64,000 bases of DNA from Glycera tridactyla (lineage: Eukaryota). The translations under genes were made by a program, and so were the position numbers. The stretch's first letter is position 1. Every line of letters begins with the position of its first letter. Shown one piece after another: positions 3,750-64,000 of the stretch. Where the stretch lies: contig OZ286465.1 of NCBI GenBank assembly GCA_965644265.1, positions 93,186,001-93,250,000 of the forward strand, read 5' to 3'. A model generated the notes under the pieces. The model made no database searches. It was not told the origin of the DNA and saw only the letters and a list, made by a program, of their open reading frames with translations.

Positions 3750-3879
3750 NNNNNNNNNNNNNNNNNNNNNNNNNNNNNNNNNNNNNNNNNNNNNNNNNNN
3801 NNNNNNNNNNNNNNNNNNNNNNNNNNNNNNNNNNNNNNNNNNNNNNNNNNNNNNNNNNNNNNNNNNNNNNNNNNNNNNN
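3750..3879. other. Assembly gap (130 N)
   Basis: N-run. TTCATTCCAAGCATG...CTTACAAGTTAGGGA occurs both before (about 3576) and after (3880) the gap. Confidence 1.
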
Positions 3880-46500: not shown

Positions 46501-48180
46501 TGCACATATCCCATCCTATGGTGTACTCACTATATCTTCCACACACACCATTCCTTACTATTGTTCCATGGAGGTACTCAGATCTCCAATTACATCAGGG
46601 TGTGGGAGATGAAGGCTATGTGCCACATGTTCATCTTCCCATAGAGACCACACATCTCACATATGAACACAGTGTCCATCTATGAAGACCACCCTTGGTC
46701 ACATCAAAAAGTGATCACTGCAAATAGGTGGCCTCCAACAAGATGTTCACTGTACAAAATACTATCATGGTGACCATTTTGGCCTTTATAGGCAGGTGGC
46801 CATTGTTGGAGATGGTCTCTCCCACAAGTTTGACCTGTGCCTATCGGACAGAATTAACACTTTCTCATTGGTTCCAAAGTCGCCCAATGTGGCCAGGAGT
46901 GCCCAGATAGTGGCTTCTGCTTCCTTTGGCAACTTTTGACTGGCAGCATGTGATCACAATTTCAATGTGGGATGAGCATGCAAGGTCTGCAGCCGACAGT
47001 TTGGAGAATACTCATTGGCCATGCTAACATGCAGTCAGCTATGCATTTGGATTTCTTATAGCAGCTTGTTATGGTTCTCACGGTACATGCGGAGTGAATA
47101 TTCATGTCTTTCTCATCGAATTCACATTCCCCATTACTGAAGAAGTTGAAAGAACCTGCCAGTCAGATTCATTTTGAAACAGCACCAATCAATGGTGGCT
47201 GAAGGAAACAGTAGTCTGCCCAATTTGTCACTTGACAGAATAGTTTAGATACTTGCTGTAATATAGGGGTCAAATTTCACTCAAACCAAATGTCTAATAA
47301 GGAAGGAGACATTACAAGGGCTCAAATGATTGTTGTAAATCAAACAACCTGCAGGCTGAGTAACATAATATTGTGCTGAATACAAAAAGAAATGTTCACC
47401 CATCCCTTAGTAAAATACAGAATATATATGGCTAATTGCGATGGCCAGTCGGAAAATGATTTGCCTACCTTCACGTTTTGGATATCTTTGACCTGAACCA
47501 GAATATTTGGAAAGAATATATGTATCACAGTGAAACATCAACAGGATTCAAACTTGGTGAGAAATCTTTGGGCTTGGTGTATCGTTATATTTTTTCACTG
47601 ACCGTTTCCTCATGCACTCCAGCTTGAAGAAACTGGCTCTGACCACCGTACATTGGAAGACAACACTCAGGTACAAAGAACTGCCATGCAGCCACCATAT
47701 ACCAAGTTACTCACATTTTCTCACACATCAACACCAACCTCAAATTGTAGGCTCACACTGTCAGCATTTACGCAAGTGAGCTCACATCCAACTCTCCGAT
47801 CCACACAAGTTTCACATTTTACCCACATCTGCTCACAATTTCAGATTCACTCGGATCATCTACATGTCCCACATTTCATTTTCATATGAGATCCTATCTA
47901 GACCTACTTTACTGTTGTAATCCACATCAGTCTCACATTTATTGTTCATATTGACTATCACATATCTTATTGGAGACTAGATTCGAATATGCTGACCTCA
48001 GGATTGACCTACAACATACCACAGGCCAGTCGTCCACAGTATCACACTCATCACTCGAGTGGGATTGAATGGCCCACGCTTGTACAAGTGACAAAGTTGA
48101 TATTGTCAATATCTGTGTCACTTGTGACTCGACTGGAATTGAGAAGTATTACAATGAAAGCTTCTTGAACTTTCAATATA

Positions 48181-48358
48181 CAGTCAAAGTTGTCCTAAGC
48201 ATGAAGCCACAGGACATGAAAAATGTGTGTGCTTAGAGCAAGTTCATGCTTAATACAGGTCAAATATAGTGAAAAATACTCTGCTGGGATGAACAGAATC
48301 CTGTTGCTTAAGACAAGTTCTTGCTTAGTACAAGTCTTGCTTCGGACAAGTTCGACTG
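48181..48358. mobile_element. MITE with CAGTC termini and TA TSD (related family)
   Basis: ta-CAGTCAAAGTTGTCC...GGACAAGTTCGACTG-ta. Confidence 0.75.
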
Positions 48359-48768
48359 TAACATCATGAGTACTTGAGTAACTTCTATTCCAAGAAGTAT
48401 CACCATGTTTACCTGGAAGATTCCCAGTGTACAAGCAACTCAACTTGAACCTGAACCCTGCACAAATGACTAATTTGACTAACAGTATTATGTATCAAGA
48501 ACCAACATATTTGCCACCAATAAGAAGGGAGATGGATTTCTGAAAGCCTCTTGTATCTTCACCCAATCAGGAGTATCCTTACTGAATTTTCCAACAAGTT
48601 GGACCAAGTGGTTGCTTCATGGTTGCGTTGAAATATGCAGTGCTGAAATAGAACTGCTCACTCACTCTCCACAATCATCACATCATAGTCCTCTGTGAGG
48701 ACTGCATACCATCCATTGTATTGATAATTCAAAGTGGCCCTTGGTTTCAAGTAGAATGCATTGCTCAC

Positions 48769-48925
48769 CATCAGTGCGGAGGTAGTCGTTGAGGAGTTGG
48801 AAGAGTGGGAAACTGTCCCATGTATCTGGCGGCTGCATCTCCAGCACGGCGTCCATATCGACGGCAAACAGTGACCAGAAGATTTCAGCATGCTCCACCA
48901 GCAGATCGCTGAACCAAGCAAACGC
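48769..48925 (-). CDS. CADPS: CAPS/CADPS internal exon ([52 protein letters not shown]), first recognisable exon in the window
   Basis: Translation is nearly identical to the recalled vertebrate CADPS segment [52 protein letters not shown]. Acceptor ctgcag, donor G|gtgagc; 157 nt, phase 0 to phase 1. Confidence 0.97.
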
Positions 48926-51900
48926 CTGCAGATCACAAACAAGTACAAGCATCAGTGTCACATCTATAGATTGCAGGAATTCATACACTCCTGCCTTGTC
49001 TTGTGACCATTGAACAACTTCCAAGTCCCTTTGCCTTCACATTCAAACCTATTTCTCCAGTTCACCAGAACAAACCCTGAGCTGAGATTTTTTGCCCCAA
49101 ACTGATTTTCCTCCAATCCAAAAGGATTATGTTCCGGATGGCCTTCAGCAGAATTCGTATATGTGGTTGCACCAATGAGATGGAGCAGTATTTTTGGAAA
49201 GTCAATTCTCTGGAAATACCCAGACATATTCTCAAAAGTATCTGTTCTGAAATTTTTGAGCTGGATTGAATGACTTCAAAACGTAGAATTTCATGCAGTT
49301 GAATATTGTTTATCCTATTTATTTGGAGCGCAAAAATTGATTTCCTCTTCTGCTAGGTTTTTCTATCAACAAAATCACAGCCATCCAGGAAATAAGGGTG
49401 CAAAGATGGGGGCATGACCTAAGACTCAAAAACCTCAACCATAATTGAAATATCAGCATTCTTATTTTCATCCAGCTGCCGCCATGGATGAGCTGATTTC
49501 ACTGAGGCAGCCCAGTTCTATTGGAATCTAATATACGGACAATGGACAATGAGGTTCACTCATCCATCACAGACCAATATTATCATGAAAATAATGAAGG
49601 CATCCTGACCCCGTGCTGAATTAAAGTGCCTACCAAAGCTCTCCTGCAATAGCTGCTGCTCAAATACAGTAATGATCATAGCTACTGAAAGCTGAACCCA
49701 GTCAAAATTCTCATTTGATAGGCAACAGGCTTAATCTTATATTTCGGATGAAGCAGAATTGGTGGAGTAACAGCTGATACTCAGTTGATAACCTACCAAT
49801 AAGGCAAAATCAGCAAGTAATACTACATGAACTACCATTCGAATGCGAGCAATATCTGGCTGCCAATGTGTTTGCTATCCTATCACTACTCATGCAGACT
49901 ACATGCCGTGAATTTTGAGGCAGAGCAGAGTGATCTCTGACACACGTGCGCTATGCTAACGTTCAATGGCTTGCAACTGGCACTAACCAGCAAAATTTAG
50001 AAGCAGGTTCTAAGGTTAGGAAAATCTATATTCAATGTGTTGCTTGTGTTCAGGAAAATCTGGACGAGTAACCAACTTTCCCTGGGGAATAAGATGTTGA
50101 TGAAGAGAAATATTTACAAATATTTTCCACAATAACATGGGCTATATCAACAATTATGAGAAGATCTTAAAGATCTGAGAGAGACAATCAAAGTTTTCCA
50201 AACAAAATGTTTCTGAACAAATTGTTCCTACTAGCCATACTGTCATGATTGTGTTGAATTCAATGTAAACAAAGTTGGACACATCCTTATGACATATAAC
50301 CTCCTAACTGACAGGTTGTGATTTTTTGAAAAGTTACTGACAGCTGAACCATTCAGGTCATTTCCAGAACAGCAAATTTGCTGAAAAATGAATATTCATA
50401 TGAAATCACCAAAACAACATAGTATATCGTGAAAAAGAGAATGATGTGCAATGCCTGATCAACTGTCTGACCAGACACATGCAGCACATGAGCAAGAGTA
50501 GAACAAATTTACAGAAATGTCACCCCCAATCAGGACAAGCAATGTGAAAAACATGATCTTTCTCAGACAAGCCCAGGCATGGGTAATCTCCCCTTCTAAA
50601 TTGAGAAATAACATTGAGCTACTTTTTGCATAAAATAATGTGGCTTTCAATCTCAATTTCTACCTTGCACCAAATTTTGAGTCCTGAGAGGAACAGAAAA
50701 GCAAGAATGTTCTTGAGGTGGGGTGGCAAAGATGGCTCAGCTTTGAGTGCAATAGAACAACAATATGCCTTTGTAATTTGTTGTCCATGCCTAAGATTCA
50801 ATCAACTTTTTACTTTTGAGGTTTAACGGCATGTATCCAATCCACCCGTCCTCTCGATTGTTCTTGCTACACAGAACAAGACTGCGTGACATCAATGCAG
50901 TACATTTCATAGGTAATTCTGGTATAAGAATCTCAGATCACAAAGTTCAAAAGATTTCCTACAACAAAATCACTGAAACAATACATACAGTGTTGTGTCA
51001 GATAAAATGATGCAAATACAATGGAAAATGACCGGTCAGACAAAACCTGGCAAGAGAATCACATGACCAGAGATTCCGTCATGTGATAGCCCAGGTGACC
51101 AGATCATGATCACATGACATGCCATGTGATCAAACAATATCAACAAGTGACCAATCAGAGAGGACAGTGCTGCGCCAGACGCTTGTTGCCTGCAATAGGT
51201 GAAAAAGACATTCAATCCCTATTCACAAACAGATGTCAAGTGCAGAAAAAGAACTTAAAAAGATGTTTGAAATAGAAAGACTTGGAATGCATGTCCACAC
51301 AGAAAGCAGTATATATAAAATATCATTCTCAAATTTACACCAAATATATAAACTCTAACAAACTTGCGAATCTAGTGATAACCAATCTATATACCACCAT
51401 AAATATATAAATATATATATGAAAATAAAACTGCCATCTACCAGACAAATGTGATGGTCATCATAGGGAATTTCAATAGCACCAGCAGAGAATCAAGCTC
51501 TTGATATTATATATATGGCACATGGCAGTAACAACGTCCAACAAGAAATGCATATATAATATACTGCAAATGATATACATATCAAGGACATGACATGTTC
51601 TTAACTGTTCCTAAACCAGATTTGACTATTTCTATTCACTGATTTCACCAAATATCACAGCAAATATTCAGTATAGGTTCAAATTAATTGGAGATTCATC
51701 AAATCAGAGCACAAGTCCCCTGTCACTTGCCCAAACCCGAAAAGTACCAACACGAACTCATGATTACTTGATTAATGATCAAACTTCCACCTCAATTATT
51801 TATCCGTAATTGTTTGAAAAAAAATTATAATTTTGAAATACTGGTGTATTTTTAACAGAAACTGAAGATACTGCTTTTTAGTCTTCCAAAGTGATTTATT

Positions 51901-52716
51901 TTCTTGAAGACAATTAGAATCACAATTGCGGGACAATTTCTATGATGCTGAAGATGGCATGGAGTGAAGTTTGGGTACTCGATATAGAAGTATTTGCATG
52001 CCACAATGGCTCCAGGAGGAGGAGACTGAAAATATAAAGGGTCACTTCATTATGATCAAGCATCATCTACACCATGGAGGCTGGGTATCCATGGTCACTA
52101 GCTTCTCTGAACCATAAAAAAATGACTCAACAGCACCTGCACTCACTTTCCCAGACGTTTGTATCCTACTGGCCGATAGACTGGTCATAAACAAATCTTT
52201 CATCATAGCACCATTGCAACAGAACCATTATATCTGAATATGACCTCGAATTTAGCTGATGTTACAAGCCTGAATTTGCCTTTCTGACCATCAAGAAAAC
52301 TTTTTGTGAAATGAGGATAAGATGGGGCAGTATTCAATGACTCCTACCATTCTGTAAGTACCAGTATGCAATAACCTTTGTAATCGGTACAGAATTGGAT
52401 GATTTGAGGAAGTACTTGATGAGTGCTTGAAGTATGCGTTGTCAACATAGAGGACAGCGATAGACAGTCTGGGAAGGTGAATCGGTCTGAAAATGGCTGG
52501 TTGCTCATGCATTTATATATTCCATAAAAATTGGTATGTGGATTTCAAGTAATACAAAGTAAATGTGAAAATATATATACAATCTAGACCCGAATCAGAT
52601 TAATACTCTGACTTTGGGACGGTGCTGATGTGGTAAGCTACTATGTCCATTCAACCCATCATCATATACAGGCTTCATCAGGGCAGGCGTGATACACATC
52701 CATCATGTTGCTCAGT

Positions 52717-52866
52717 NNNNNNNNNNNNNNNNNNNNNNNNNNNNNNNNNNNNNNNNNNNNNNNNNNNNNNNNNNNNNNNNNNNNNNNNNNNNNNNNNNNN
52801 NNNNNNNNNNNNNNNNNNNNNNNNNNNNNNNNNNNNNNNNNNNNNNNNNNNNNNNNNNNNNNNNNN
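52717..52866. other. Assembly gap (150 N)
   Basis: N-run next to a tandem repeat. Confidence 1.
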
Positions 52867-52944
52867 CTATGAGAGTTGTAAGTGGAAAGAGATGGTGGCT
52901 CAGATGTTGAGCAGGAGTGACACTAGTGGTTTTGTTTGGCATCA

Positions 52945-53545
52945 TAAAGTATGAGTGTCATTAGTGAAGATATGTCCTGTGTACCCGTTAGTGAGAGATA
53001 TTCCATGTGATGGTAATTAATACAGTATGGGTCCCATCAGAGAGATATGTCCTGTAGGGCTGTGTATCATATAGTGTAAGTCCAATTAGAGAGATCTTTA
53101 TACTTGTAGTCAATGGTCTCTGACTCCCTCCGTCCAGCATGTGTAAATAAAGTTTCAAATCAAATCTGTCCTATGTGGCTGTATACGATACAGCATGAGT
53201 CCCATTAGTGAGATATGTTCAGTATGTTAGTATAATACAGTATGGGTCCAACCAGTGGGGTATGAACTGCGTGTCAGTACATAGAAAGTATGAAGTCCCA
53301 TCAGTGCGATATAATGTTCTGTGTGGTAGTTTTGACAGGATGAATCCCATTGGTCATGTCATGTGTGTCAGTATATTACACAGTATGAGTCCCGTTAGTG
53401 AGGTATGTCCTATGTGATGGTATGATATACGATATGATCCCATTGGTGAGGTATGTCCTATGCAATCATATGATACAAGTCCCATTAGTGGGGTATGTCC
53501 TATGAGATGGTATATTATACAGGCTGAGTCCAATAAGTGAGGTAA
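52945..53545. repeat. Diverged minisatellite, about 48-49-bp unit
   Basis: GAGTCCCATTAGTGAGATATGTCCTATGTGATGGTATGATATACAGTAT-like units, adjacent to an N-gap. Confidence 0.85.
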
Positions 53546-55548
53546 ATGTTCGACATGTGTATAATATCAGCCATGAAAAATGTCTATATTGATCATCATC
53601 TGAAAACATCAAAATTGCTCGCAGTTTGAATGATTAGGATGCAAATTCAGAAATGGATTCAGATTCGGACAGGTGTGTTCTGGGTTGTTTCAAACATATG
53701 AGTGCGTTCTTTTATGGCCATATGAATTCAAACCAGAATTCTGGTGGCAAAAAACTGACAGTTGTGTTTGTGGCTTCGACCTGATGAAACCAGTGGAATG
53801 AACATGTCGTCCAAGTGAGTCCGATAGTCATAGAAATATATTGAGGTAGAGGCAGCAGCAGTCAGTAGCAGCTAAATTCAGTGCAGCGCTCTCACAGCGA
53901 GATGAATAAAACATCATGCATGAAGTATTGCAGCGAACAGCTGGTATCTATACTCTCACGTCTGTTTGGAGTGAATCTCCCATGAGGATAGTTTGTTCGT
54001 CAAAGTAACTCATCAATCATAGTCAAAATTGCTGTGTGATGTTAATGCAGTCAGATCAAGGATCCAAGCGATCTTGGCTGATACAAGATAACATTACCCA
54101 CATTTGGATAAATCAACTCTTGACACTGCTGGGGATAAATCAAATGATTTGTCATCTCATGATCACTGGAAGGTTTTGAATGTCATTCCATCTCAAATAA
54201 TACTTGCATTTCATTTCACAACGAAATTCCAAACACTGAGTAACATATTGAGTTATATATCGAGCAATGATGTCAAGAAACACATGTTTCATTTCACGGA
54301 ATGTCTTTGAAATGGAGCTCATAACCTTCAAATTGCCAAGAGATGATGTGCTATACTCCACCACCTAATTCTGGTGATCACCCTACAGACCTGGTGTCAA
54401 CACGGAAAAGCAGTGAAGTTCTGCAGTGAACCTTGTTCTCTCCTATCATAAGAAGCGCCGCGCTCTATGTTAAATCCAATACTCTCATTACAAAGCGTCC
54501 TAGCTCGACCTTCGACTTGTGACCTGCCAGGCATGTTTCAATCAGGGAAAGTGTTACTGGAAGCTTTCTTTTTCAATACGTACACAATTGAAGAGCAGTC
54601 TCTGTATCATTAATCACTCCATTCACAACTCACTGATTGAGTGTCAATAAGATGAAGCAGACAGCCATGCGTGGCGGCAATCAAGTTCATTCGCATCTTC
54701 ACCAAAAACTTGACATTTACAAGTTGGTGAATGAGCAGTGAAAGCCCACGATCTTGGTACAGTTTATGTACACCTGAGCATGACACGCAAACTTTGGATA
54801 TGGTCACACGACTTAGACATTCTCAGCATTTTCCAAAGCTGAATGCTGGCAGAACATCCCTGATTTCATGAACTATACAGGAATATACCAGGAGCATGTG
54901 ACTTTGATTTTGAATAGTGTGAAGACATCTTCAAGTCAGGGCTCAAGCAAACTTTTCAGCTCTTCATAAATATGAATGTGTTCTTCTTTTCACGCCATTT
55001 TGAATGGTGTGAAGGCATCTTCAAGCCAGGTTTCAGGCAAACTTTTCAGCTCTCCAGAAATGTGAATGTGTTCTTCATTTCATACCATAGCCATTTATTT
55101 TGAGTAAAATGTATGCTGTTTATCACAACCAAATTTCAGATTTTTTCATCCATTGTATAACCAAACATATGTAAACTTCGGAGAATTTTCTGGTCTCTGG
55201 CTGAATTGAAAAAACTCAAATCATGAAACAACCCTTGAAATATCTCCACAGTTGGCCTTATATAAGTATGCTCCTAATAGTTGTGAATTGCATGGGAGTA
55301 AACTCAATTCAATAGCAGCAAAATCTTTTGATTTTGACAGGAAATATACATCATTCTTTGAATAATTTGCGGACTGGTTCAACATTTATGCCAATGATAT
55401 ATCTTGAAATCACTTGTGAATACCCAACACCTGAAGCTATTTCTGCTGCTCCATGCACTGTAAGTGATTTCAAGAGTAATCAAATGACTGCGATTAGGCT
55501 GCCGGCAGGACACAAGCGATCATGCGCAGATGAGTTGGATTCTCTTAC

Positions 55549-55578
55549 CATGTTCGTATGGCCCTGTGTCTCCACATT
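55549..55578 (-). CDS. CADPS: Candidate 30-nt CADPS microexon (NVETQGHTNM if phase 0)
   Basis: Acceptor ccccgactttcag, donor ATG|gtaaga; 30 nt, no stop in phase 0. Confidence 0.4.
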
Positions 55579-58546
55579 CTGAAAGTCGGGGTGTACATCA
55601 GACTCATTATCATTCCGTACAAAGTTGGCAGCAAGTTAAGTAAAAATGTTCTGAACAGCAGCATAAATATGGGATGCTCATGGAAATTAAAACATGGCAA
55701 AAGTTGATTGTCCAACAAAATTATCGAGTCAGGATGATTGCCGTATAGGGGTCTACTTCTCAAAGAGAGACAGTGTTCAGTAACCATTTCACTTTGAATT
55801 ACACCCATCATTGATGATGAACTGGGCCTAGGGTCAACTCAAGCTTGTATGGATATAAGATGCATTGAAACATGAGATACGAGGCTTCCCGGTAAGAGAC
55901 CACTTCTATTCAAAATAGTGAAATGTATCGACAAAATAACAACACTGCTCTTTGAAGACAAATATGGTGGTCTTCTGTTGCAGCTTCCCAATGATACAAG
56001 ACCCAAGGTGACACTTTATATCCAAAGTTGACCATCTAATGTTGATAAGCATTTTTGATGCCAAATGTACTACTTGAGTGGAATCTACAATAGGCAAGCT
56101 TGAGGTGAGCAACCAGCAAGCACCTGCCTTGGCGGAAATTTGCGGTGTTAGCAGATCGTAGGTTCCACTGTAAAGCAATTTCGGTAGGAGACTAGATATG
56201 AGGGTGACCCATATTGTGCTACACAGGTAGCAATTACTGGCATGATACCCGCATCAAGTTTCAGTGACACCGGATACTCTAATCCAATCAGCTATTGTCC
56301 CACTCATGACTTTTTGACATAGCAGAAGCACATATTGGATTTTCCCATGCTCATCTTGGCCATATGCATCAATTGATATACTCTTGTTTATTCTTGATTA
56401 AAAGCCTTGATTGTCATGATATTTTCAAGGCACAATGTGGTTTTTGATAATACCAAATAGATTATACAAATTTGTGTTGAATATCTGACAAAATCGAAAG
56501 TAGGTTCTTTTTGACATAACCACACAATGACTTATGTTGTTGACTGTCATGACAGTTTCGACAGACATCTTCCTCATAACTACTGCTCACTAGGTGGCGG
56601 TGTGGCAGTATTGGCAAGGAAGATGGCTGACAGCTGTCGAAATAGTTGAAGACGTGAGTGATCGTTTGGTCATGTCAAGAAGAACCTACTGTCGATCTCC
56701 ATCAGACTAACCAGATGATCTTCTTCAACTATCTGACAAAATGTTCCAAGTTATCACCACTTTTGCCATGCGTTAAACAGTAGGGGAATGATCTGCGATC
56801 TTCGGACATTTAATTTCTTATGTATCATCCTAGATTATGTCATTCAGAAAGATGATGCTATTGACCTCCAAATGGCCATTCAGAACATTTTATGCAATCT
56901 ACTTTGAAAATCTTATTCAGAAAGACTGCCATTAAATCCTACTATGATGTCTAACCCTCCCTAGTGTTCAAAAATGACCGAGAACATGATTTCAATGGCT
57001 GAATATATCACCATGAATATCGGTTGAAACCAGGAGTCCAACCCCAGTACCCAACTAATAATAAAAAACATAATCATAATTGTGCTAGTGAATACTAGTC
57101 TTTTATCTCCTCATTCATACGGAGGATCAGTGAATTAGTTGGAGGAAAAAGTCTAATGAGATGTGTGAATAGAAAAATCAATCAAAATGCATACTGAGAG
57201 TCAATCTGGAGGAAACACTCTATGATTGATATAAAATATCTAACGATAGATTCCCTAAATATATAAAAAATGGGAAAAATATTTTTGAGTGCATCTAATG
57301 ATGCAAATGGTGGTATAAATCAATATTGGTCATTTCACATGGCAGTCATTTCAACAGAGTACAAGAGTAAGAGCTCATCTTTTAACAGGTCCATGATCAT
57401 TTTCCACATCAAAATCATTCTATGACACTGTGATTTCTCATTGGGGTAACCATTTTGCACTTTCATAAGCTGATATAGGTAAGAGATTCAAGGACAATTT
57501 CATTATCATTTCAAGTGCACTTAAATTCAGGAAGTATAGCCGTATAGCGATGATACTCTGACAAAAAAACTATCCAAATTGGTGGCACTTGTTGGCTGGA
57601 AGATGAGCATGTAAAGTTGGCTCATTCTGATGTCAGAAGGGATTCATGATCTTGATGAAGCAAAACTTTCAATCCTTTGGTTCAAAGATTCTCGGCATTC
57701 TAATCACCATTCAAAGGTGAATTCGCATTTTGAAATGGCCTCCATCATCAAAGAGGTGACCAGATGTCTACATCTTCCCTACAGATTTGTCCTAAAAGCT
57801 GTGCAAGTTAAAAAGAGGTGATTTCATATTTGAAATAACGAACTTTTGATAGTTGTTTGTCCAAGGTCAGAATATGACCAGAAAACTTCAATTCAGAATT
57901 GCTGTCAATAACACTTTCAGGATTTCCATCTAGCTCAATACATGAAACTTATTCATTGCCATCAAGAAAAACACATTATTTCCCAGTTGATTGAATCAAG
58001 TTTGGAAGTCAAACGACAGGGGGAGTTGTCAATGAGCGATTATGTAGTACAAAGTTGAGTGTGTATGTGAAATGACCGTGACCCCATTTTTATGGCATAA
58101 GCAAAACTATATCATTCCAATGGGAAGTGGTACATATGGGCATTTCAAGCCTGATAAAAACTACCTGGAGAGTATCACAGTCATTGAAATAAATTCACAT
58201 CATTTTCCAAATCTTATCAATATTATATATACATGTATACGGAAATATTCAAATGAGAAATGACTAAGCAGTTGCAGGAATTTGAATATAATCCCTGAAG
58301 GGCAAATACTTGTAGATTGGAAAATACATGTATCATTCCTTAAGAGCTAATGCATTCATATCGATGAAAAAATATATGGATGAAATGCAAGATTCATATT
58401 GATTAAATCCTATGAAGAAAGACCATTATTCACACATTTTCCCAACATACTAGACCTGACAAATTCACGGGTACTCGGTATTGGAACATCTAAGTCGATG
58501 AGTTAAGATTCCCCACTGAAGTCTTCATGGTCTCATCATTGTTAGT

Positions 58547-59060
58547 ATTGTTAATTGTACTTTCTGTGATATCAATATCACAGTAACGATTGTTAACTGA
58601 ACTTTCTGTGATATCAATATAATATTAACGATTGTTTACTGAACTTTTTGTGATATCAATATCATATCAATAATTGTCAACTGTACTTTTTGTGATATCA
58701 ATATCATAGTAATGATTGTTATCTGTAGAATTTGTGATATCAATATCATAGTAATGATTGTTACCTGTACTTTATGTGATATCAATATCATAGTAATGAT
58801 TGTTAACTGTTCTTTTGTGATATCAATATCATAGTAATGATGGTTCACTGAACTTTTTGTGATATCAATATCATAGTAATGATGGTTCACTGAACTTTTT
58901 GTGATATCGATATCATAGTAATGATTGTTAACTGTACTTTTTGTGATATCAATATCATAGTAATAATTGTTAACTGTACTTTTTGTGATATCAATTTCAT
59001 AGTAACGATGGTTCACTGAACTTTTTGTGATAGTGATGATTCCTCACTGAACTCTTCATG
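58547..59060. repeat. Minisatellite, 42-bp unit, about 12 copies
   Basis: TGTGATATCAATATCATAGTAATGATTGTTAACTGTACTTTT repeated head to tail without spacers. Confidence 0.95.
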
Positions 59061-59505
59061 ATATCAATAAGGAATAAGAACCAAGTAACTGATTACAATT
59101 TTTTTCCATTATAATACCTGAATCAAGACTGTGAGGAAAATGAAAGTATGCAGTTAACCAGCATGCAGAGGATGTGAACACTGTGCGTACATATACATGT
59201 ACCTAATGTGTGCATGTGCGCACAGACGGGAATGTGTACTGAATAACGGCAGTGTGGCATAGAAGAGAGACAACTCTTGCTCCTGTCTCATTTCTATATG
59301 GTACGATCAAAATATAGTCATCAAAATCTACATGAAATGGAATAAAACACCCGAGATGCAAGCAGGCAAGATGATGTATATAAACATGTATTCAACTGGA
59401 TGCAGTCTGAATGAGAGAAGGGTGGAGCAGCGAAGGTGATGTGCGCGAGGAGAGAGAGATGAGGAGAGAGTGTGTGAAACAGATGGAGGAGAAGACGAAA
59501 CTCAC

Positions 59506-59517
59506 CGATTTAAACGC
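59506..59517 (-). CDS. CADPS: Candidate 12-nt CADPS microexon (GCGTTTAAATCG; AFKS if phase 0)
   Basis: Long pyrimidine tract then tgccgggtag acceptor, G|gtgagt donor; length is a multiple of 3. Confidence 0.6.
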
Positions 59518-60261
59518 CTACCCGGCAAATAGGAGGGAAGAAAACAACACAGACAAGAACATTATTACGGTCATGCCACAAATACGCAAAACGTTACCAT
59601 GGTTACAGTGTCTTACAAGAGGCTGCACATTGTGACTCGAGGCATTCGGAATTCCTCGTGTATGGATATTCAGAATTTCTCGAAATTCGTAGACCGAATA
59701 CGGCAAGAATCAGCTGTTCACAGTTCATTACAATGGGTGGGGGTGCAGTTAACTGGGGAGGGGGAGCACAAGAAACTTACATATGCATGCGCAGGGCAGG
59801 GAAGACAGCACATAGGTTAATGGGGGAGCCAAGTACATGGATATTAGCTACAAGGCTGGCCTGCACTAACACATGGTGCATATGTCAATTCACAATAGTC
59901 CACGCCTGAGTGTATTTTCTCAGAGACCTCGAGCATCAAAGTTGGGGACAGTTCACCGAAATCCAGGAGCAGACCAAACTAAGGCACATTTCACTTAGGT
60001 TGAGGTGTCCTCAGAAATGGCATAGGTGCACTCTAACTGCAGAGTATATGGAGCACACCAGCAATACTAGTGAGGACACTTCCCTTATAATGAAATGGGC
60101 CTTTTGCTGTCATCAGCAATCAGGATTTGCGTGGTAAATGGACAATTGCAAAATTTGAGACATTGGCCAAAATTCATGGCAAAGTTTGTTTGGTGAGTCG
60201 TACATAGAAATGAGTTGTTGCAAAGGGGTCTGCATTTTTAACAAGAACATCTAATACAGTC

Positions 60262-63190
60262 CTAGATTACTTCACTGGAAGAGAGTGACTTTTGCTGAGT
60301 CATATCCAATATCAATACTTTCTGAAACCCTCGAGAAGCGGGAGGGAAGTCAGCCTCAGTTTTGATGAAATGGGTCTCAGTAACGGTAAAATACAATGAA
60401 TCATCACATGAACAAATGCCTCTGATGCTGACAATGGGTTGAATTCTGAAAATTCTTTGATGGATGATTGGAAAGAGTGGCATATACCCACATGATGAGG
60501 GGAACCTTCAAAGAAAATACACACAAGCCCCTTCTTCAACTACATCCGTCTAGAAAAGACGGCTGTAACCAGCCATCAAAGATCCTATTTATAAGATACT
60601 GAGATTTATTGAGGATTCAATCTACTACATTTGTTTTTCATTTTTGATTTCAAAGAAACTGTGATGAAATGAGCGGGGTGAAAATCATGATGTAAGGTTT
60701 GGATTACTGTATTGAAGTATAACAGTCAGAGCTGATTGCAATCCCGTGAACACCTCTGGGTGGACACCTCCATCTGGTCAGAAATACCAGAATGGACTAG
60801 ATACCAAAATTCAAGATACAATCACATAAGAGTGAACCCTTAAATGTGATGAACAGTGCAACATGTGCAACTCCAACCTGGCAAAGAGCGATCCGAAAAG
60901 TTAACAACACTGGTAACCCCCTTCCCAACCCCTTTGTAGGAATAGCTTTAAATCAGGTCATGATCACAGAAATTTACAGCTGGTCTACAAGAGCTATAAT
61001 CCATACTAGTCAAAAGGGAAATGCCCAACATCAAAACCTCAGATAATTTATATCAGGTTTCATTTAATGGGAACACCCGACAGAGAAATGATGCCCATAC
61101 TCATGAATCATGTGATCCCAAAGGCAACAATACTCATGGATACTTCAGATCAAGGGAGCAAAGTAATTCCATTAGTAGAAATATGAAAGAACTTGATAAA
61201 GGAACTTGATACCAATGAGAACCAGTGTGTTGAACAATCGGAAGTTTGAATTGAATATCCTGTTTCTGCAGGGCATTCCACAGTTCAGGTAAGTAGACCA
61301 TGACAAAATAGAAACACCAAAAGGTAATACACCAGACCTCATGCAATTCAAATTATCCCGATTCTATTACTTTTGAATGTGATGTTGTGTGTGCATTGGC
61401 TGCTCAGATTAACTGATTCAAAGAGCAATGTTCAATATCTCTTCAATGAAAGCAGAATAATATGAGTCTGATATATATTGCCCAAGTGTTACTCCAGACA
61501 AAACATGTACTTCAAGGGGAATGTGTGGCTAGCTTTTATATTCCCCTGCCCGGGAACTTCTCCTTAATAAAATTCATATAATTTCTCAAGTGTGAGACAT
61601 ATACTCTGAAAAGACTCTCTCAAGAGGGACTGAATGAAAATTGAAATCATACTCTTGACTGAATTCACAGTTTGGGTCTTACATGTCCATGCAGATTAGA
61701 TACTACCGATTATAGGTTAACAGCATGTATCAAATCAACAAATAATGTGTGCTGCTGATCAAGACTGTTGAGAATTGGATGCTCTGTCCCCTGTGATTAT
61801 CACTCCCACCAACCCTTTGCACAGAATGGTGGGTAACCAATGGCCTTTGGTAGATCAGAGGCAAACACATCAAGTGATGCCAGTGATTCACATCTTTGAG
61901 AATGCCATTCACTTGGATATATTGCAACCAATTCAATTATCTTTGCAACAGTATTATCTGGATTTTTCACTGGTGCTCAACACTAATTTATCTGATTCAA
62001 TCATGCAATATGAGTTCAATCATCTCAGTAAATGAGGAGTATCAAATATCAATGAGCCTCAAGATTTCATCTATCCTTGATTAAATCAAGTTTATTCAAA
62101 TTGAAGGCATCTGTGGATGAAGAATATCAATCAAAATACAAAATAAAGATATTCCATCTGATCTCATCAGATGAGAATCATTTTAAGCTAGAAGCTCTAG
62201 ATGTTTTTTTGCAGTCCCATGACTCATGAAGCTTCTCAAATATGCATAAACCTATCAGCTCCAATGTGAAAAGATAGAGTCAAAATCAGTCATAAGTTGA
62301 CATTTCTTTTGAGATTTCCGATCATCAGCTTCCTTGAGCAATAGTTGACATCACCGGCTTAAGCCATGCAAACCTCAATTGTACGTTTATAACATGTCAA
62401 AGATTTTTTTGAGGATAAAGTCCATCGTTCAGTGTCTTTATTGGATGTCAAAGATTCATTGTGTGAGAATTCAGGTGTGAGAAATTTTAATGCAGTCGAC
62501 CCCAGGATGAAACTCGACTAGTACTTATTGAACAAATACCCTTGCCGAAGAAAAGCTGTTTCTTTAGTATTCATTACTTTCGTGTGCTAGACCCTGGATA
62601 ATCACAACTACATAATTGTGAGTGCCGAGACGAGAGGGTACTTGATTTTGTAAATGTGGCTTGATTCAATGAGCTCTAGACAAAGAATAGATATGATTAA
62701 CTGCAACTCTGGAATAATGGTTTACTGATAGTGGAGACATGAATGATGCAAGCAATCGATGTACATTCAAACATGTCCTACGCATGTTGCCAATGGAATG
62801 TCGTGCATTCCTAGCAAAGGTCACACTCAGTAGAGGGACATTGAAGTGAAAACACTTTCGATGGGATTATTCCAGGGTTTTGCTTAATTCAAGGCATGCA
62901 CAAGTCAGGTTCAGCATGAACTATGCCTCTGAAGTCTGGCTAATAATCTTCAACCAAAAACCCAATTAATTGAAACTTTACTCAAACCTGAATGACCATC
63001 AATACCATGCAGAAACAAAAAAAATATGGAACTGTGCAAAATATATTTCAAACTTGGAACCTTGACCATAACGAGTTGAATGCAATTGTAAAACTCCCAA
63101 AACAAAAGAAGATGACACAGCAGCAAAAACCTTCCTGATAATATACCTAAGCTTCCCTGAAACAGAGAAAACATATTACTGTACTTCAAT
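60262..63190 (-). pseudogene. Decayed LINE fragments (endonuclease- and RT-like remnants)
   Basis: Remnant motifs TVTETHF, AGDVN and WLQYIQVNG in broken frames; not collinear, so probably more than one element. Confidence 0.3.
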
Positions 63191-64000
63191 CTTACCTAAT
63201 ACTCCACTAAATTGTTTTTGTGCACATATCAAGATAATGGGGTTCTGTAGGTTGGAAAGGTCCATGGCACAATTCCTGCCTCAGGTTAAAAATTCCGAAT
63301 GAAACTTCAACTTATGCTACTGATACAATGGAAAAACCCACTCAGGTGGGATATTCAACACACCACTACACCTCACAAATCTGGGAAGATATCAGAAACC
63401 ACTGAAGAAAGACAACATTGGAAACAGGTGGCTGTCATAAGGTATTAGTGGGATATGTTAGGTGGTTAGTATTTGTGGGTGTGAGGGCAGGGATAAGCAC
63501 GGGGATGGAAGAGTACAGACTGAACAGACTGAGGAGTCAACACCTGAAATTGGGATTAACCACAATATGTCTGGTACCATCATACCGGGAGGACATCTGC
63601 AAACAACTTTCACTACATTGTTGACTTACGTAGAATTGGGCTGCAGGACCTTCATCTATACCACAAATCCTGATATTGGGAAGCACTTCTTCCTATTACC
63701 ATGGGCTGATGCCATGACAAAACACTTAGCCAGCCTGAGAACTGACCGCAATCATTTCATGGATTACGGTTCAACCGCATGCGAGGATCACCGGTTCCAT
63801 GGCATGTGAGGTACTTGTAAGGATTGTGTTATATGCAATACATTATGCTCCCCAAATCAAGTGGCTCGGCCACTAGAAAATACTGGTGGCTGCAGATCCA
63901 AATAATCATGATACACATAAGGCCTTTGATGTTCTACATGCTGAATGATTTACCTGATTAAAGAAGGCTTAATTACCACTGCTTAGTACATGGTTTTTCA

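What the first reader, a model, noticed from the sequence alone, without database searches (positions are those of the whole stretch)
59506..59517. 12-nt microexon with a neural (eMIC/SRRM-type) signature upstream of the AFAW exon
Seen: on the minus strand a long U/C tract, then UGC about 10 nt before the AG, the exon GCGTTTAAATCG, a consensus gtgagt donor, a CU-rich downstream intron and UGCAUG at about 59162-59167. Its first six bases equal the first six of the next constitutive exon (GCGTTT = AF). Known: SRRM3/4 eMIC-dependent microexons have a UGC close to the 3' splice site, and vertebrate CADPS/CADPS2 vary by short inserts between ..HHAE and AFAW (recalled, should be verified). Inference: an independently evolved neural microexon at the same hotspot.
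Basis: partly seen in the sequence, partly recalled or inferred. Interest (0 to 1): 0.7.

Follow-up and report, generated by a model that had tools for sequence, protein, structure and literature searches.

The report
Conserved 12-base microexon in CAPS gene
The 12-base stretch is almost certainly a genuine tiny exon of the vesicle-priming gene CAPS/CADPS, but it is an old exon shared with molluscs, brachiopods, arthropods and probably nematodes, not a new invention of this animal.

Summary
On the minus strand, GCGTTTAAATCG (59517..59506) lies between TAG and GTGAGT. It follows a U/C tract with UGC at -10. It sits in the 16.2-kb intron between the ..EEHHAE exon (just outside the window, ends in phase 0) and the AFAW exon, and reads in frame as AFKS.

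It is not chance. In four related genomes the intron cannot be aligned, except for an island holding the same 12-nt exon with TAG and GTGAGT (AFKS, AFKS with a synonymous change, AFKA, EFQS).

Annotated isoforms carry a 12-nt A/E-F/Y-x-x insert at the same junction: chiton (AYQA), oyster (AFVT), Biomphalaria (AFAS), Lingula (EFRA), a spider and a porcelain crab (AFRS). Daphnia, other crustaceans, a scorpion and several insects carry longer inserts with the same start. Isoforms with and without an insert were seen for chiton, oysters, Daphnia and portunid crabs. Published RT-PCR primers for the C. elegans unc-31 microexon flank this junction.

The insert falls at the break between two long helices of the SNARE-binding MUN/DAMH region.

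The UGC at -10 is shared with Lingula, and the genome has an SRRM_C hit, so eMIC-type control is plausible but untested. No RNA evidence could be obtained for this genome. "Independently evolved" is not supported.

The parts
59506..59517 (-). 12-nt microexon GCGTTTAAATCG, phase 0 to phase 0, encoding AFKS
   Evidence: The same 12-nt exon is conserved in L015, L016, L017 and L018. Annotated orthologous inserts are found at the same junction.
59518..59560 (-). 3' splice-site region: U/C-rich tract, UGC at 59527-59525, a purine interruption (CGGG), then TAG
   Evidence: UGC lies at -10 or -12 in window, L015 and L017, at -20 in L018, and at -10 in Lingula. The live L016 copy has none.
59500..59505 (-). 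consensus 5' splice site GTGAGT
   Evidence: It is identical in all four related genomes and in Lingula.
59572..59576 (-). GCAUG 59 nt upstream of the exon (candidate Rbfox-type element or part of the branch-point region)
   Evidence: (U)GCAUG at -59, -55, -58 and -48 in window, L015, L017 and L018. It is absent in L016 and Lingula.
59406..59499 (-). CU-rich downstream intron (80% pyrimidine, CUCUCU/UCUU runs)
   Evidence: The same stretch is 67-72% pyrimidine in the four related genomes against a 52-55% background. It is not enriched in Lingula.
59162..59167 (-). UGCAUG 350 nt downstream of the exon start
   Evidence: TGCATG also lies at +361 in L015 and +341 in L016, although the flanks do not align. 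This is suggestive only.
48769..48925 (-). downstream constitutive exon starting AFAW (MUN domain profile positions 77-136)

Best explanation
This is an alternative 12-nt cassette microexon of the single CAPS/CADPS (unc-31) gene. It is spliced in between the exon ending ..LQQNEEHHAE (C17:93251155-93251261, just beyond the window's end) and the exon starting AFAWFSDLL. Inclusion adds four residues, AFKS, without changing the frame.

The insert falls at the short break between two long helices at the start of the MUN/DAMH region, the part of CAPS reported to bind SNAREs. It probably changes the geometry or register between those helices and so tunes vesicle priming.

It is the ortholog of a 12-nt A/E-F/Y-x-x cassette found at the same junction in molluscs, a brachiopod and arthropods. 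[quoted passage not shown]

Shown: position, frame, splice signals, conservation across genomes, annotated isoforms with and without the insert in other species, and the predicted structural location.

Inferred:
- that it is spliced in this animal;
- that it is alternative and specific to neurons or neuron types;
- that inclusion depends on the conserved UGC about 10 nt before the 3' splice site (SRRM eMIC-type activation), possibly with GCAUG (Rbfox-type) elements and the CU-rich downstream tract.
For: 1. Anatomy and frame.

2. It is the only AG-ORF-GTRAGT candidate in the 16.2-kb intron.

3. Conservation in related genomes.
- blastn of 17 kb of the window against a related genome, L015, whose AFAW exon is only 84% identical at DNA level, finds just two hits: the AFAW exon and this island.
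- L015 and L016 have GCCTTTAAATCG, which is AFKS with a synonymous GCG>GCC change.
- L017 has GCCTTTAAAGCG (AFKA) and L018 has GAATTTCAATCG (EFQS).
- All four keep TAG and GTGAGT.

4. Annotated proteins.
- Liolophura X1/X2 carry AYQA and X3/X4 carry none.
- Oysters carry AFVT, a second 27-nt cassette, both, or none.
- Biomphalaria carries AFAS and Lingula EFRA. Argiope and Petrolisthes carry AFRS.
- Portunid crabs carry AFRSDK, DK alone, or none. Daphnia carries AFKGDQ or none, and the Daphnia-type pair is also seen on transcript contigs P0240 versus P0241.

5. The Lingula genomic copy has TGC at -10, TAG and GTGAGT.

6. The unc-31 microexon primers in PMC12287369 translate to IRVTEF and LSDHSEI, which flank HHGE|AFAW in nematode UNC-31 (P0198). 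C. auriculariae has one 12-nt candidate in that 762-nt intron.

7. AlphaFold2 models. Without the insert: helix 43-71, a one-residue break, helix 73-99. With the insert: helix 39-68, a four-residue loop, helix 73-99. In PDB 6a68 (CAPS1) HHAE is directly followed by AFAW.

8. SRRM_C (PF15230) hit of 31.2 bits, above the 27-bit cut-off, at C18:30689972-30690073.

9. No Rfam family matches the island.
Against: - No RNA evidence for this genome. The only run found (X1, Logan contigs, guessed to be RNA) gave one contig. It covers the HHAE exon, is spliced to the upstream exon, runs 53 nt into the intron and stops. Nothing was laid on the microexon and no joints were reported.
- Tissue specificity and regulators are inferred from motifs only.
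- The UGC is missing at the live copy in L016 and in the nematode candidate.
- The upstream GCAUG is missing in L016 and Lingula.
- The flanks of the downstream UGCAUG do not align.
- The insert region has only moderate model confidence (pLDDT 62-68).
- The taxa of the four related ENA assemblies are not named.
Confidence: 0.85

Rival explanations
1. The exon is real, but inclusion is driven by Muscleblind plus ELAV-type factors recruiting PRP-40/U1, as reported for MUN-domain microexons in C. elegans, and not by an SRRM eMIC domain. The conserved UGCC/UGCU before the splice site would then be a YGCY Muscleblind site.
For: [quoted passage not shown]
- The unc-31 primers place that exon at this same junction.
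- The conserved UGC sits in a YGCY context in window, L015, L017, L018 and Lingula.
Against: - For unc-13, the tested microexon in that paper, the functional sites lie in the downstream intron.
- Here the downstream MBL-1 and EXC-7 type motifs are neither enriched nor conserved.
- A UGC within 15 nt of the AG, behind a U/C tract, is the eMIC-type arrangement. I know this from the SRRM3/4 literature; it was not tested here.
- The nematode candidate itself lacks the UGC.
Confidence: 0.3
2. The microexon is constitutive in this lineage: always included, not a regulated cassette.
For: - The GTGAGT donor is strong.
- The exon is conserved in all four related genomes.
- No transcript of this species is available to show skipping.
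Against: - The species with several isoforms on record that I checked here (chiton, oysters, Daphnia, portunid crabs) have forms with and without an insert.
- The acceptor is weak, because purines interrupt the tract just before TAG.
- The worm counterpart is switch-like between neuron types.
Confidence: 0.1
3. The conserved island is not an exon. It would be an intronic element, such as a decoy or intermediate splice site that helps remove the 16-kb intron, or a small RNA, or simply a chance match to splice signals.
For: - The intron is long (16.2 kb).
- No reads were obtained across the exon.
- In L016 12.8 donor-less copies of the unit sit upstream of the live exon, which shows that the unit can exist without being an exon.
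Against: - The open frame, the 12-nt length and both splice sites are kept while the peptide changes conservatively, including one synonymous change.
- The same insert is present in annotated proteins, and on a Daphnia-type transcript contig (P0240), of other phyla.
- No GTRAGT follows the AG directly, so it is not a ratchet site.
- No Rfam family matches.
- A chance match of the 21-nt block in a 10-kb intron is about 1e-7 by my arithmetic.
Confidence: 0.04

Closest known systems
   Same: It is in the same gene family and, judging by the published primers, at the same exon junction (..EEHHGE | AFAW). It is a frame-preserving microexon inside the MUN region. A 12-nt candidate sits at that place in C. 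auriculariae.
   Different: - The peptide differs (candidate QLRG against AFKS).
- There is no UGC before the nematode acceptor.
- The worm exon is reported to depend on EXC-7 and MBL-1. Nothing is known about regulation here.
- Homology between the two, as opposed to reuse of the same junction, is not shown.
Annotated 12-nt cassette in mollusc, brachiopod and arthropod CADPS isoforms (Liolophura AYQA, Crassostrea AFVT, Biomphalaria AFAS, Lingula EFRA, Argiope and Petrolisthes AFRS; Daphnia AFKG+DQ, crabs AFRS+DK)
   Same: - Same junction, same length, same phase.
- Same A/E-F/Y-x-small motif.
- In Lingula the same TGC-at-minus-10, TAG and GTGAGT signals.
- Isoforms with and without it were seen in chiton, oysters, Daphnia and portunid crabs.
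   Different: - Most are predicted-isoform (RefSeq XP) or other database records. I found no paper that describes this exon in any of these species.
- Arthropods add a further 6-nt microexon (DK or DQ).
- Oysters add a further 27-nt cassette. I found no counterpart of either here.
Vertebrate SRRM3/4 (eMIC)-dependent neural microexons, including the 9-nt CADPS2 exon 19 and the 9-nt GLK exon of mouse Cadps
   Same: - A tiny frame-preserving exon in the same gene family.
- UGC close to the 3' splice site behind a U/C tract.
- The CADPS2 exon is described as adding 3 residues between two alpha helices and as SRRM3-dependent (bioRxiv 10.1101/2024.06.13.598849).
   Different: - 12 nt here against 9 nt, with an unrelated peptide.
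- I could not place CADPS2 exon 19.
- In the one CAPS1 sequence seen, the only non-constitutive GLK lies about 273 residues upstream of AFAW. If it is the reported 9-nt exon, that is a different site.
- Four vertebrate sequences and PDB 6a68 have no insert at HHAE|AFAW.

Membership tests
CADPS/UNC-31 junction microexon (cassette between ..EEH[HY]xE and AFAW) | Lies in the intron between the orthologous ..EEHHAE and AFAW exons | tested here: met
   It lies 5,637 nt below the HHAE donor and 10,580 nt above the AFAW acceptor.
CADPS/UNC-31 junction microexon (cassette between ..EEH[HY]xE and AFAW) | 12 nt, phase 0 to phase 0, peptide A/E-F/Y-x-S/A/T | tested here: met
   AFKS here. AFKS, AFKA and EFQS in related genomes. 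AYQA, AFVT, AFAS, EFRA and AFRS in named species.
CADPS/UNC-31 junction microexon (cassette between ..EEH[HY]xE and AFAW) | Present in mature mRNA of this organism | tested here: inconclusive
   The single usable run gave one contig that stops 53 nt into the intron. It showed no joints and nothing on the microexon.
CADPS/UNC-31 junction microexon (cassette between ..EEH[HY]xE and AFAW) | Alternative: isoforms with and without it | not testable with these tools
   Shown only for other species (Liolophura, oysters, Daphnia, portunid crabs). No transcripts of this species were reachable.
SRRM3/4 eMIC-dependent neural microexons | Length 3-27 nt, with UGC within about 15 nt upstream of the 3' splice site, behind a U/C-rich tract | tested here: met
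   UGC at -10 and 74% pyrimidine over -45..-4. UGC is conserved at -12, -10 and -20 in L015, L017 and L018, and at -10 in Lingula. It is absent at the live L016 copy.
SRRM3/4 eMIC-dependent neural microexons | The genome encodes an SRRM protein with the C-terminal eMIC-bearing region | tested here: met
   PF15230 SRRM_C scores 31.2 bits (cut-off 27) at C18:30689972-30690073. This is a single-exon hit, and the full gene was not modelled.
SRRM3/4 eMIC-dependent neural microexons | Neural-enriched inclusion that is lost when SRRM is removed | not testable with these tools
   This needs tissue RNA-seq and a knock-down.
Rbfox-regulated exons | Conserved (U)GCAUG in the flanking introns | tested here: inconclusive
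   GCAUG at -48..-59 in 4 of 5 related genomes. UGCAUG at +341..+361 in 3 of 5, without alignable flanks. Neither is in Lingula at those places.
EXC-7/MBL-1/PRP-40 co-regulated MUN-domain microexons (C. elegans) | Conserved MBL-1 (GCUUGC/YGCY) and EXC-7 (UUAAGUU) type elements in the downstream intron | tested here: not met
   There is one GCTTGC at +143 in the window only. It is not conserved, YGCY is not consistently enriched, and there is no UUAAGUU.

The most novel reading that the evidence does not exclude
The 12-nt cassette at the HHAE|AFAW junction would be one ancestral protostome (possibly bilaterian) neural microexon. Its UGC-at-minus-10 signature would have been kept since the origin of the SRRM eMIC programme, and it would be homologous to the C. 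elegans unc-31 microexon and perhaps to the 9-nt CADPS2 exon 19 of vertebrates. That would make it one of the very few microexons traceable across phyla, and a handle on what the first neural microexons did: tuning the SNARE-binding MUN region of CAPS by neuron type.
Probability: 0.3. Interest if true: 0.6.

Novelty: new member of a known kind. Interest (0 to 1): 0.4.

Why it matters
CAPS primes dense-core and synaptic vesicles. Recent work in worms and mice shows that three- or four-residue microexons in MUN-domain proteins are switched between neuron types and change synaptic output.

This report shows that the exon is real here. It also shows that the same 12-nt cassette, with a UGC element at the same distance from the splice site, recurs in a brachiopod, and that the cassette itself recurs in molluscs and arthropods. 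That points to a deeply conserved control point at one helix break of the SNARE-binding region.

It corrects the idea of independent origin. It also gives a concrete, cheap RT-PCR target for testing neural microexon programmes in spiralians. For annotation, gene models of this species should carry both junction forms.

Tried and rejected
- **RNA evidence.** The look-up of sequencing runs returned a single run (X1, Logan contigs, 88 Mb). Read laying on L014 (HHAE exon to microexon, 5,981 nt) showed one contig over the HHAE exon that runs 53 nt into the intron. It showed no joints and nothing on the microexon.
- **Joined model.** Exons were searched one by one by reference.
- **First exon-level protein search.** It returned almost only genomic single-exon ORFs. 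They were useless for isoforms but gave handles to related genomic contigs.
- **Representative search.** It gave few full-length proteins, none with an insert. It became useful only through cluster listing.
- **Region search with an insert-less query.** It listed 120 insert-less proteins, because gap-free matches outrank the others. Repeating it with an insert-bearing query worked.
- **Genomic loci for named species.** Look-ups for Liolophura, C. virginica, Daphnia, Argiope and Petrolisthes found nothing on record, because only the longest product per gene is indexed.
- **Second cassette.** A counterpart of the arthropod 6-nt or oyster 27-nt cassette between the microexon and the AFAW exon was sought and not found.
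- **Small RNA.** The idea that the island is a small RNA was rejected, since no Rfam family matched.
- **Recursive splicing.** A ratchet site was rejected, because no GTRAGT follows the AG.
- **Vertebrate insert.** The insert at this junction could not be verified from four sequences, PDB 6a68 and three papers.

Full report
**Observation**

On the minus strand the window reads a U/C-rich tract, then TTTGCCGGGTAG, then GCGTTTAAATCG (59517..59506), then GTGAGT.
- The UGC is at 59527-59525, starting 10 nt before the exon.
- UGCAUG is at 59167-59162.
- The 94 nt after the donor are 80% pyrimidine, against a 54% local background.
- The first six bases equal those of the AFAW exon (48925..48769, 157 nt).

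**Gene context**

The window is G000:C17:93186001-93250000. The AFAW exon matches Pfam MUN positions 77-136. A six-frame scan of the genome with PF06292 placed the preceding MUN exon just outside the window. Reading it gives ..DDLIHLAELCIEVLQQNEEHHAE|gtgagc at C17:93251155-93251261, 107 nt, ending on a complete codon.

The candidate therefore lies in a 16,229-nt intron, 5,637 nt below that donor and 10,580 nt above the AFAW acceptor. It reads in frame as AFKS.

**Chance**

In the whole intron it is the only AG-(3 to 27 nt open frame)-GTRAGT candidate. First-order Markov shuffles give about 2.4 such candidates without a pyrimidine-tract filter, and about 0.01 with a filter of at least 80%. The real tract is 79%, just under that filter. 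The site is therefore unusual by itself but not decisive.

**RNA**

The one run offered (X1, Logan contigs, guessed to be RNA) was laid on L014, which spans the HHAE exon to the microexon. One 2,898-nt contig covers the HHAE exon. It is joined to other sequence exactly at the exon's 5' end, so it is spliced upstream. It then continues 53 nt into the intron and ends. Nothing lay on the microexon and no joints were reported. This says the gene is transcribed in that sample and nothing about the microexon.

**Conservation in related genomes**

A word search with the AFAW exon found about 200 single-exon ORFs on genomic contigs. Four of them gave 20-kb loci from different ENA assemblies: L015, L016, L017 and L018.

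blastn of window 47000-64000 against L015 gave only two hits: the AFAW exon (84% identity) and window 59544-59500.

| Locus | Acceptor context | Exon | Peptide |
|---|---|---|---|
| L015 | tttag | GCCTTTAAATCG | AFKS (synonymous GCG>GCC) |
| L016 | ttgtag | GCCTTTAAATCG | AFKS |
| L017 | cgttag | GCCTTTAAAGCG | AFKA |
| L018 | actag | GAATTTCAATCG | EFQS |

Each is followed by gtgagt. In L017 and L018 each lies between recognisable HHAE and AFAW exons. So the length, the frame, both splice sites and a conservative peptide are kept while the rest of the intron is unalignable. That is the signature of a coding exon. No Rfam family matches the island.

**Annotated isoforms elsewhere**

Cluster listing of a representative from the large search turned up Daphnia-type transcript contigs with (P0240, AFKGDQ) and without (P0241, P0153) an insert between HYAE and AFAW. 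A region search with an insert-bearing Daphnia isoform, plus two more cluster listings, gave inserts at exactly this junction:
- chiton Liolophura: AYQA in X1/X2, none in X3/X4;
- oysters: AFVT, a second 27-nt cassette, both, or none;
- Biomphalaria: AFAS;
- Lingula: EFRA;
- spider Argiope and crab Petrolisthes: AFRS;
- portunid crabs: AFRSDK, DK alone, or none (lobster: AFRSDK);
- Hemiptera and Orthoptera: AYRSDK;
- scorpion: AFQSDR;
- barnacles: AFRTDK;
- Hymenoptera: VVPQ;
- Lepidoptera: a 13-residue insert;
- sea urchin: RDKPKESK or none.

The common unit is a 12-nt A/E-F/Y-x-x exon. Arthropods often add a separate 6-nt exon. The window's AFKS is a member of this series, so it is an ortholog and not an independent invention.

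**Lingula and nematodes**

The Lingula gene (L021) shows cttgtgcttggtag|GAGTTTCGAGCG|gtgagtg, with TGC at -10. The block TGC-Y-N-GG-TAG is thus shared between a brachiopod and the window's relatives.

For C. elegans, PMC12287369 lists primers for the 'unc-31 microexon'. By hand translation the forward primer reads IRVTEF, and the reverse complement of the other reads LSDHSEI. These flank ..EEHHGE|AFAW in nematode UNC-31 (P0198). In C. auriculariae the 762-nt intron at that junction holds one candidate, ttttag|CAACTCCGCGGC|gtaagt: 12 nt, QLRG, with no UGC. [quoted passage not shown]

**Structure**

In PDB 6a68 (CAPS1) HHAE is directly followed by AFAW.

AlphaFold2 on natural sequences with a 29- or 30-row alignment gives:
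- without the insert (Liolophura X4, mean pLDDT 86.6): helix 43-71, one non-helical residue, helix 73-99;
- with the insert (Lingula, mean pLDDT 76.7): helix 39-68, a four-residue loop, helix 73-99.

The exon therefore lengthens the connection at a break between two long helices. This is in the DAMH/MUN region, which the literature describes as the SNARE-binding part of CAPS (PMC12702071). The effect on priming is inferred.

**Regulation**

For eMIC-type control:
- exon size;
- UGC at -10 behind a U/C tract, conserved in L015, L017, L018 and Lingula;
- a purine-interrupted, hence weak, acceptor;
- a Pfam SRRM_C hit above the cut-off in this genome.

Against, or open:
- the live L016 copy and the nematode candidate lack the UGC;
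- the UGC is also a YGCY (Muscleblind-type) site;
- the downstream MBL-1 and EXC-7 type motifs are not conserved.

GCAUG lies 48-59 nt upstream in four of five related genomes. UGCAUG lies at +341 to +361 in three of them, with unalignable flanks. These are candidate Rbfox sites, no more.

**Vertebrates**

Four vertebrate sequences and 6a68 have no insert at the junction. One of the two GLK tripeptides in a CAPS1 sequence lies about 273 residues upstream, after the PH domain; the other lies in a segment shared with two other vertebrate sequences. If that upstream GLK is the mouse 9-nt exon, that exon is at another site. A preprint describes a 9-nt, SRRM3-dependent CADPS2 exon 19 that adds three residues between two helices. 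I could not place it.

**Verdict**

This is a genuine, conserved, probably alternative microexon. It is a new member of a known kind. The eMIC label is plausible but untested. Independent origin is not supported. Earlier scan notes call this genome annelid; I did not test that.

Noticed in passing
L016:5402-6448 (related genome, ENA ERZ21939214): An 82-nt unit is repeated 12.8 times at 98% identity directly upstream of the live microexon. Each unit carries the pyrimidine tract, TGCTGGGTAG and GCCTTTAAATCT, but CT instead of the GT donor. These are donor-less copies of the microexon with its 3' splice site. The live copy alone lacks the UGC. They could be decoy acceptors or just a satellite expansion.
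   Followed up: partly
L014:5753-5914 (C17:93251102-93251263), run X1: A 2,898-nt contig is spliced at the 5' end of the HHAE exon but reads 53 nt into the 16-kb intron and then ends. It has one mismatch in the exon and one in the intron. It is either unspliced pre-mRNA or an assembly branch point at the donor.
   Followed up: no
Proteins P0513, P0446, P0508, P0512 (oysters); P0538, P0444 (crab and an unnamed transcript contig): The same intron holds a second cassette in some lineages: a 27-nt exon in oysters (RVKANIVNQ, KSKTKNIHQ, KNMANNFNQ) and a 6-nt exon in arthropods (DK or DQ). These are used with or without the 12-nt exon. No counterpart was found in the window.
   Followed up: partly
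L022:12419-12430 (Caenorhabditis auriculariae unc-31): A 12-nt candidate microexon (QLRG) with TAG and GTAAGT lies 66 nt after the HHGE donor. It is not part of the annotated product CAD6191936.1.
   Followed up: partly
G000:C18:30689972-30690073 (L019): A single-exon match to Pfam SRRM_C (31.2 bits, cut-off 27) is the likely C-terminal region of an SRRM2/3/4-type gene. A second, sub-threshold match lies at C17:108020236-108020352.
   Followed up: no
Proteins P0418 (Rhynocoris, VSSHFS) and P0501 (Orussus, V): These inserts at the junction begin with V, or with VS, as if the model read on into a GTGAGT-type donor. They are probably annotation artefacts and not exons.
   Followed up: no
window 52717-52866 and 3750-3879: Two runs of N (150 and 130 nt). 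The first lies inside the intron between the microexon and the AFAW exon.
   Followed up: no
G000:C26:35440687-35467238: A second MUN-domain gene, with exons covering Pfam MUN positions 1-473 on the plus strand. It is presumably an unc-13 family member.
   Followed up: no
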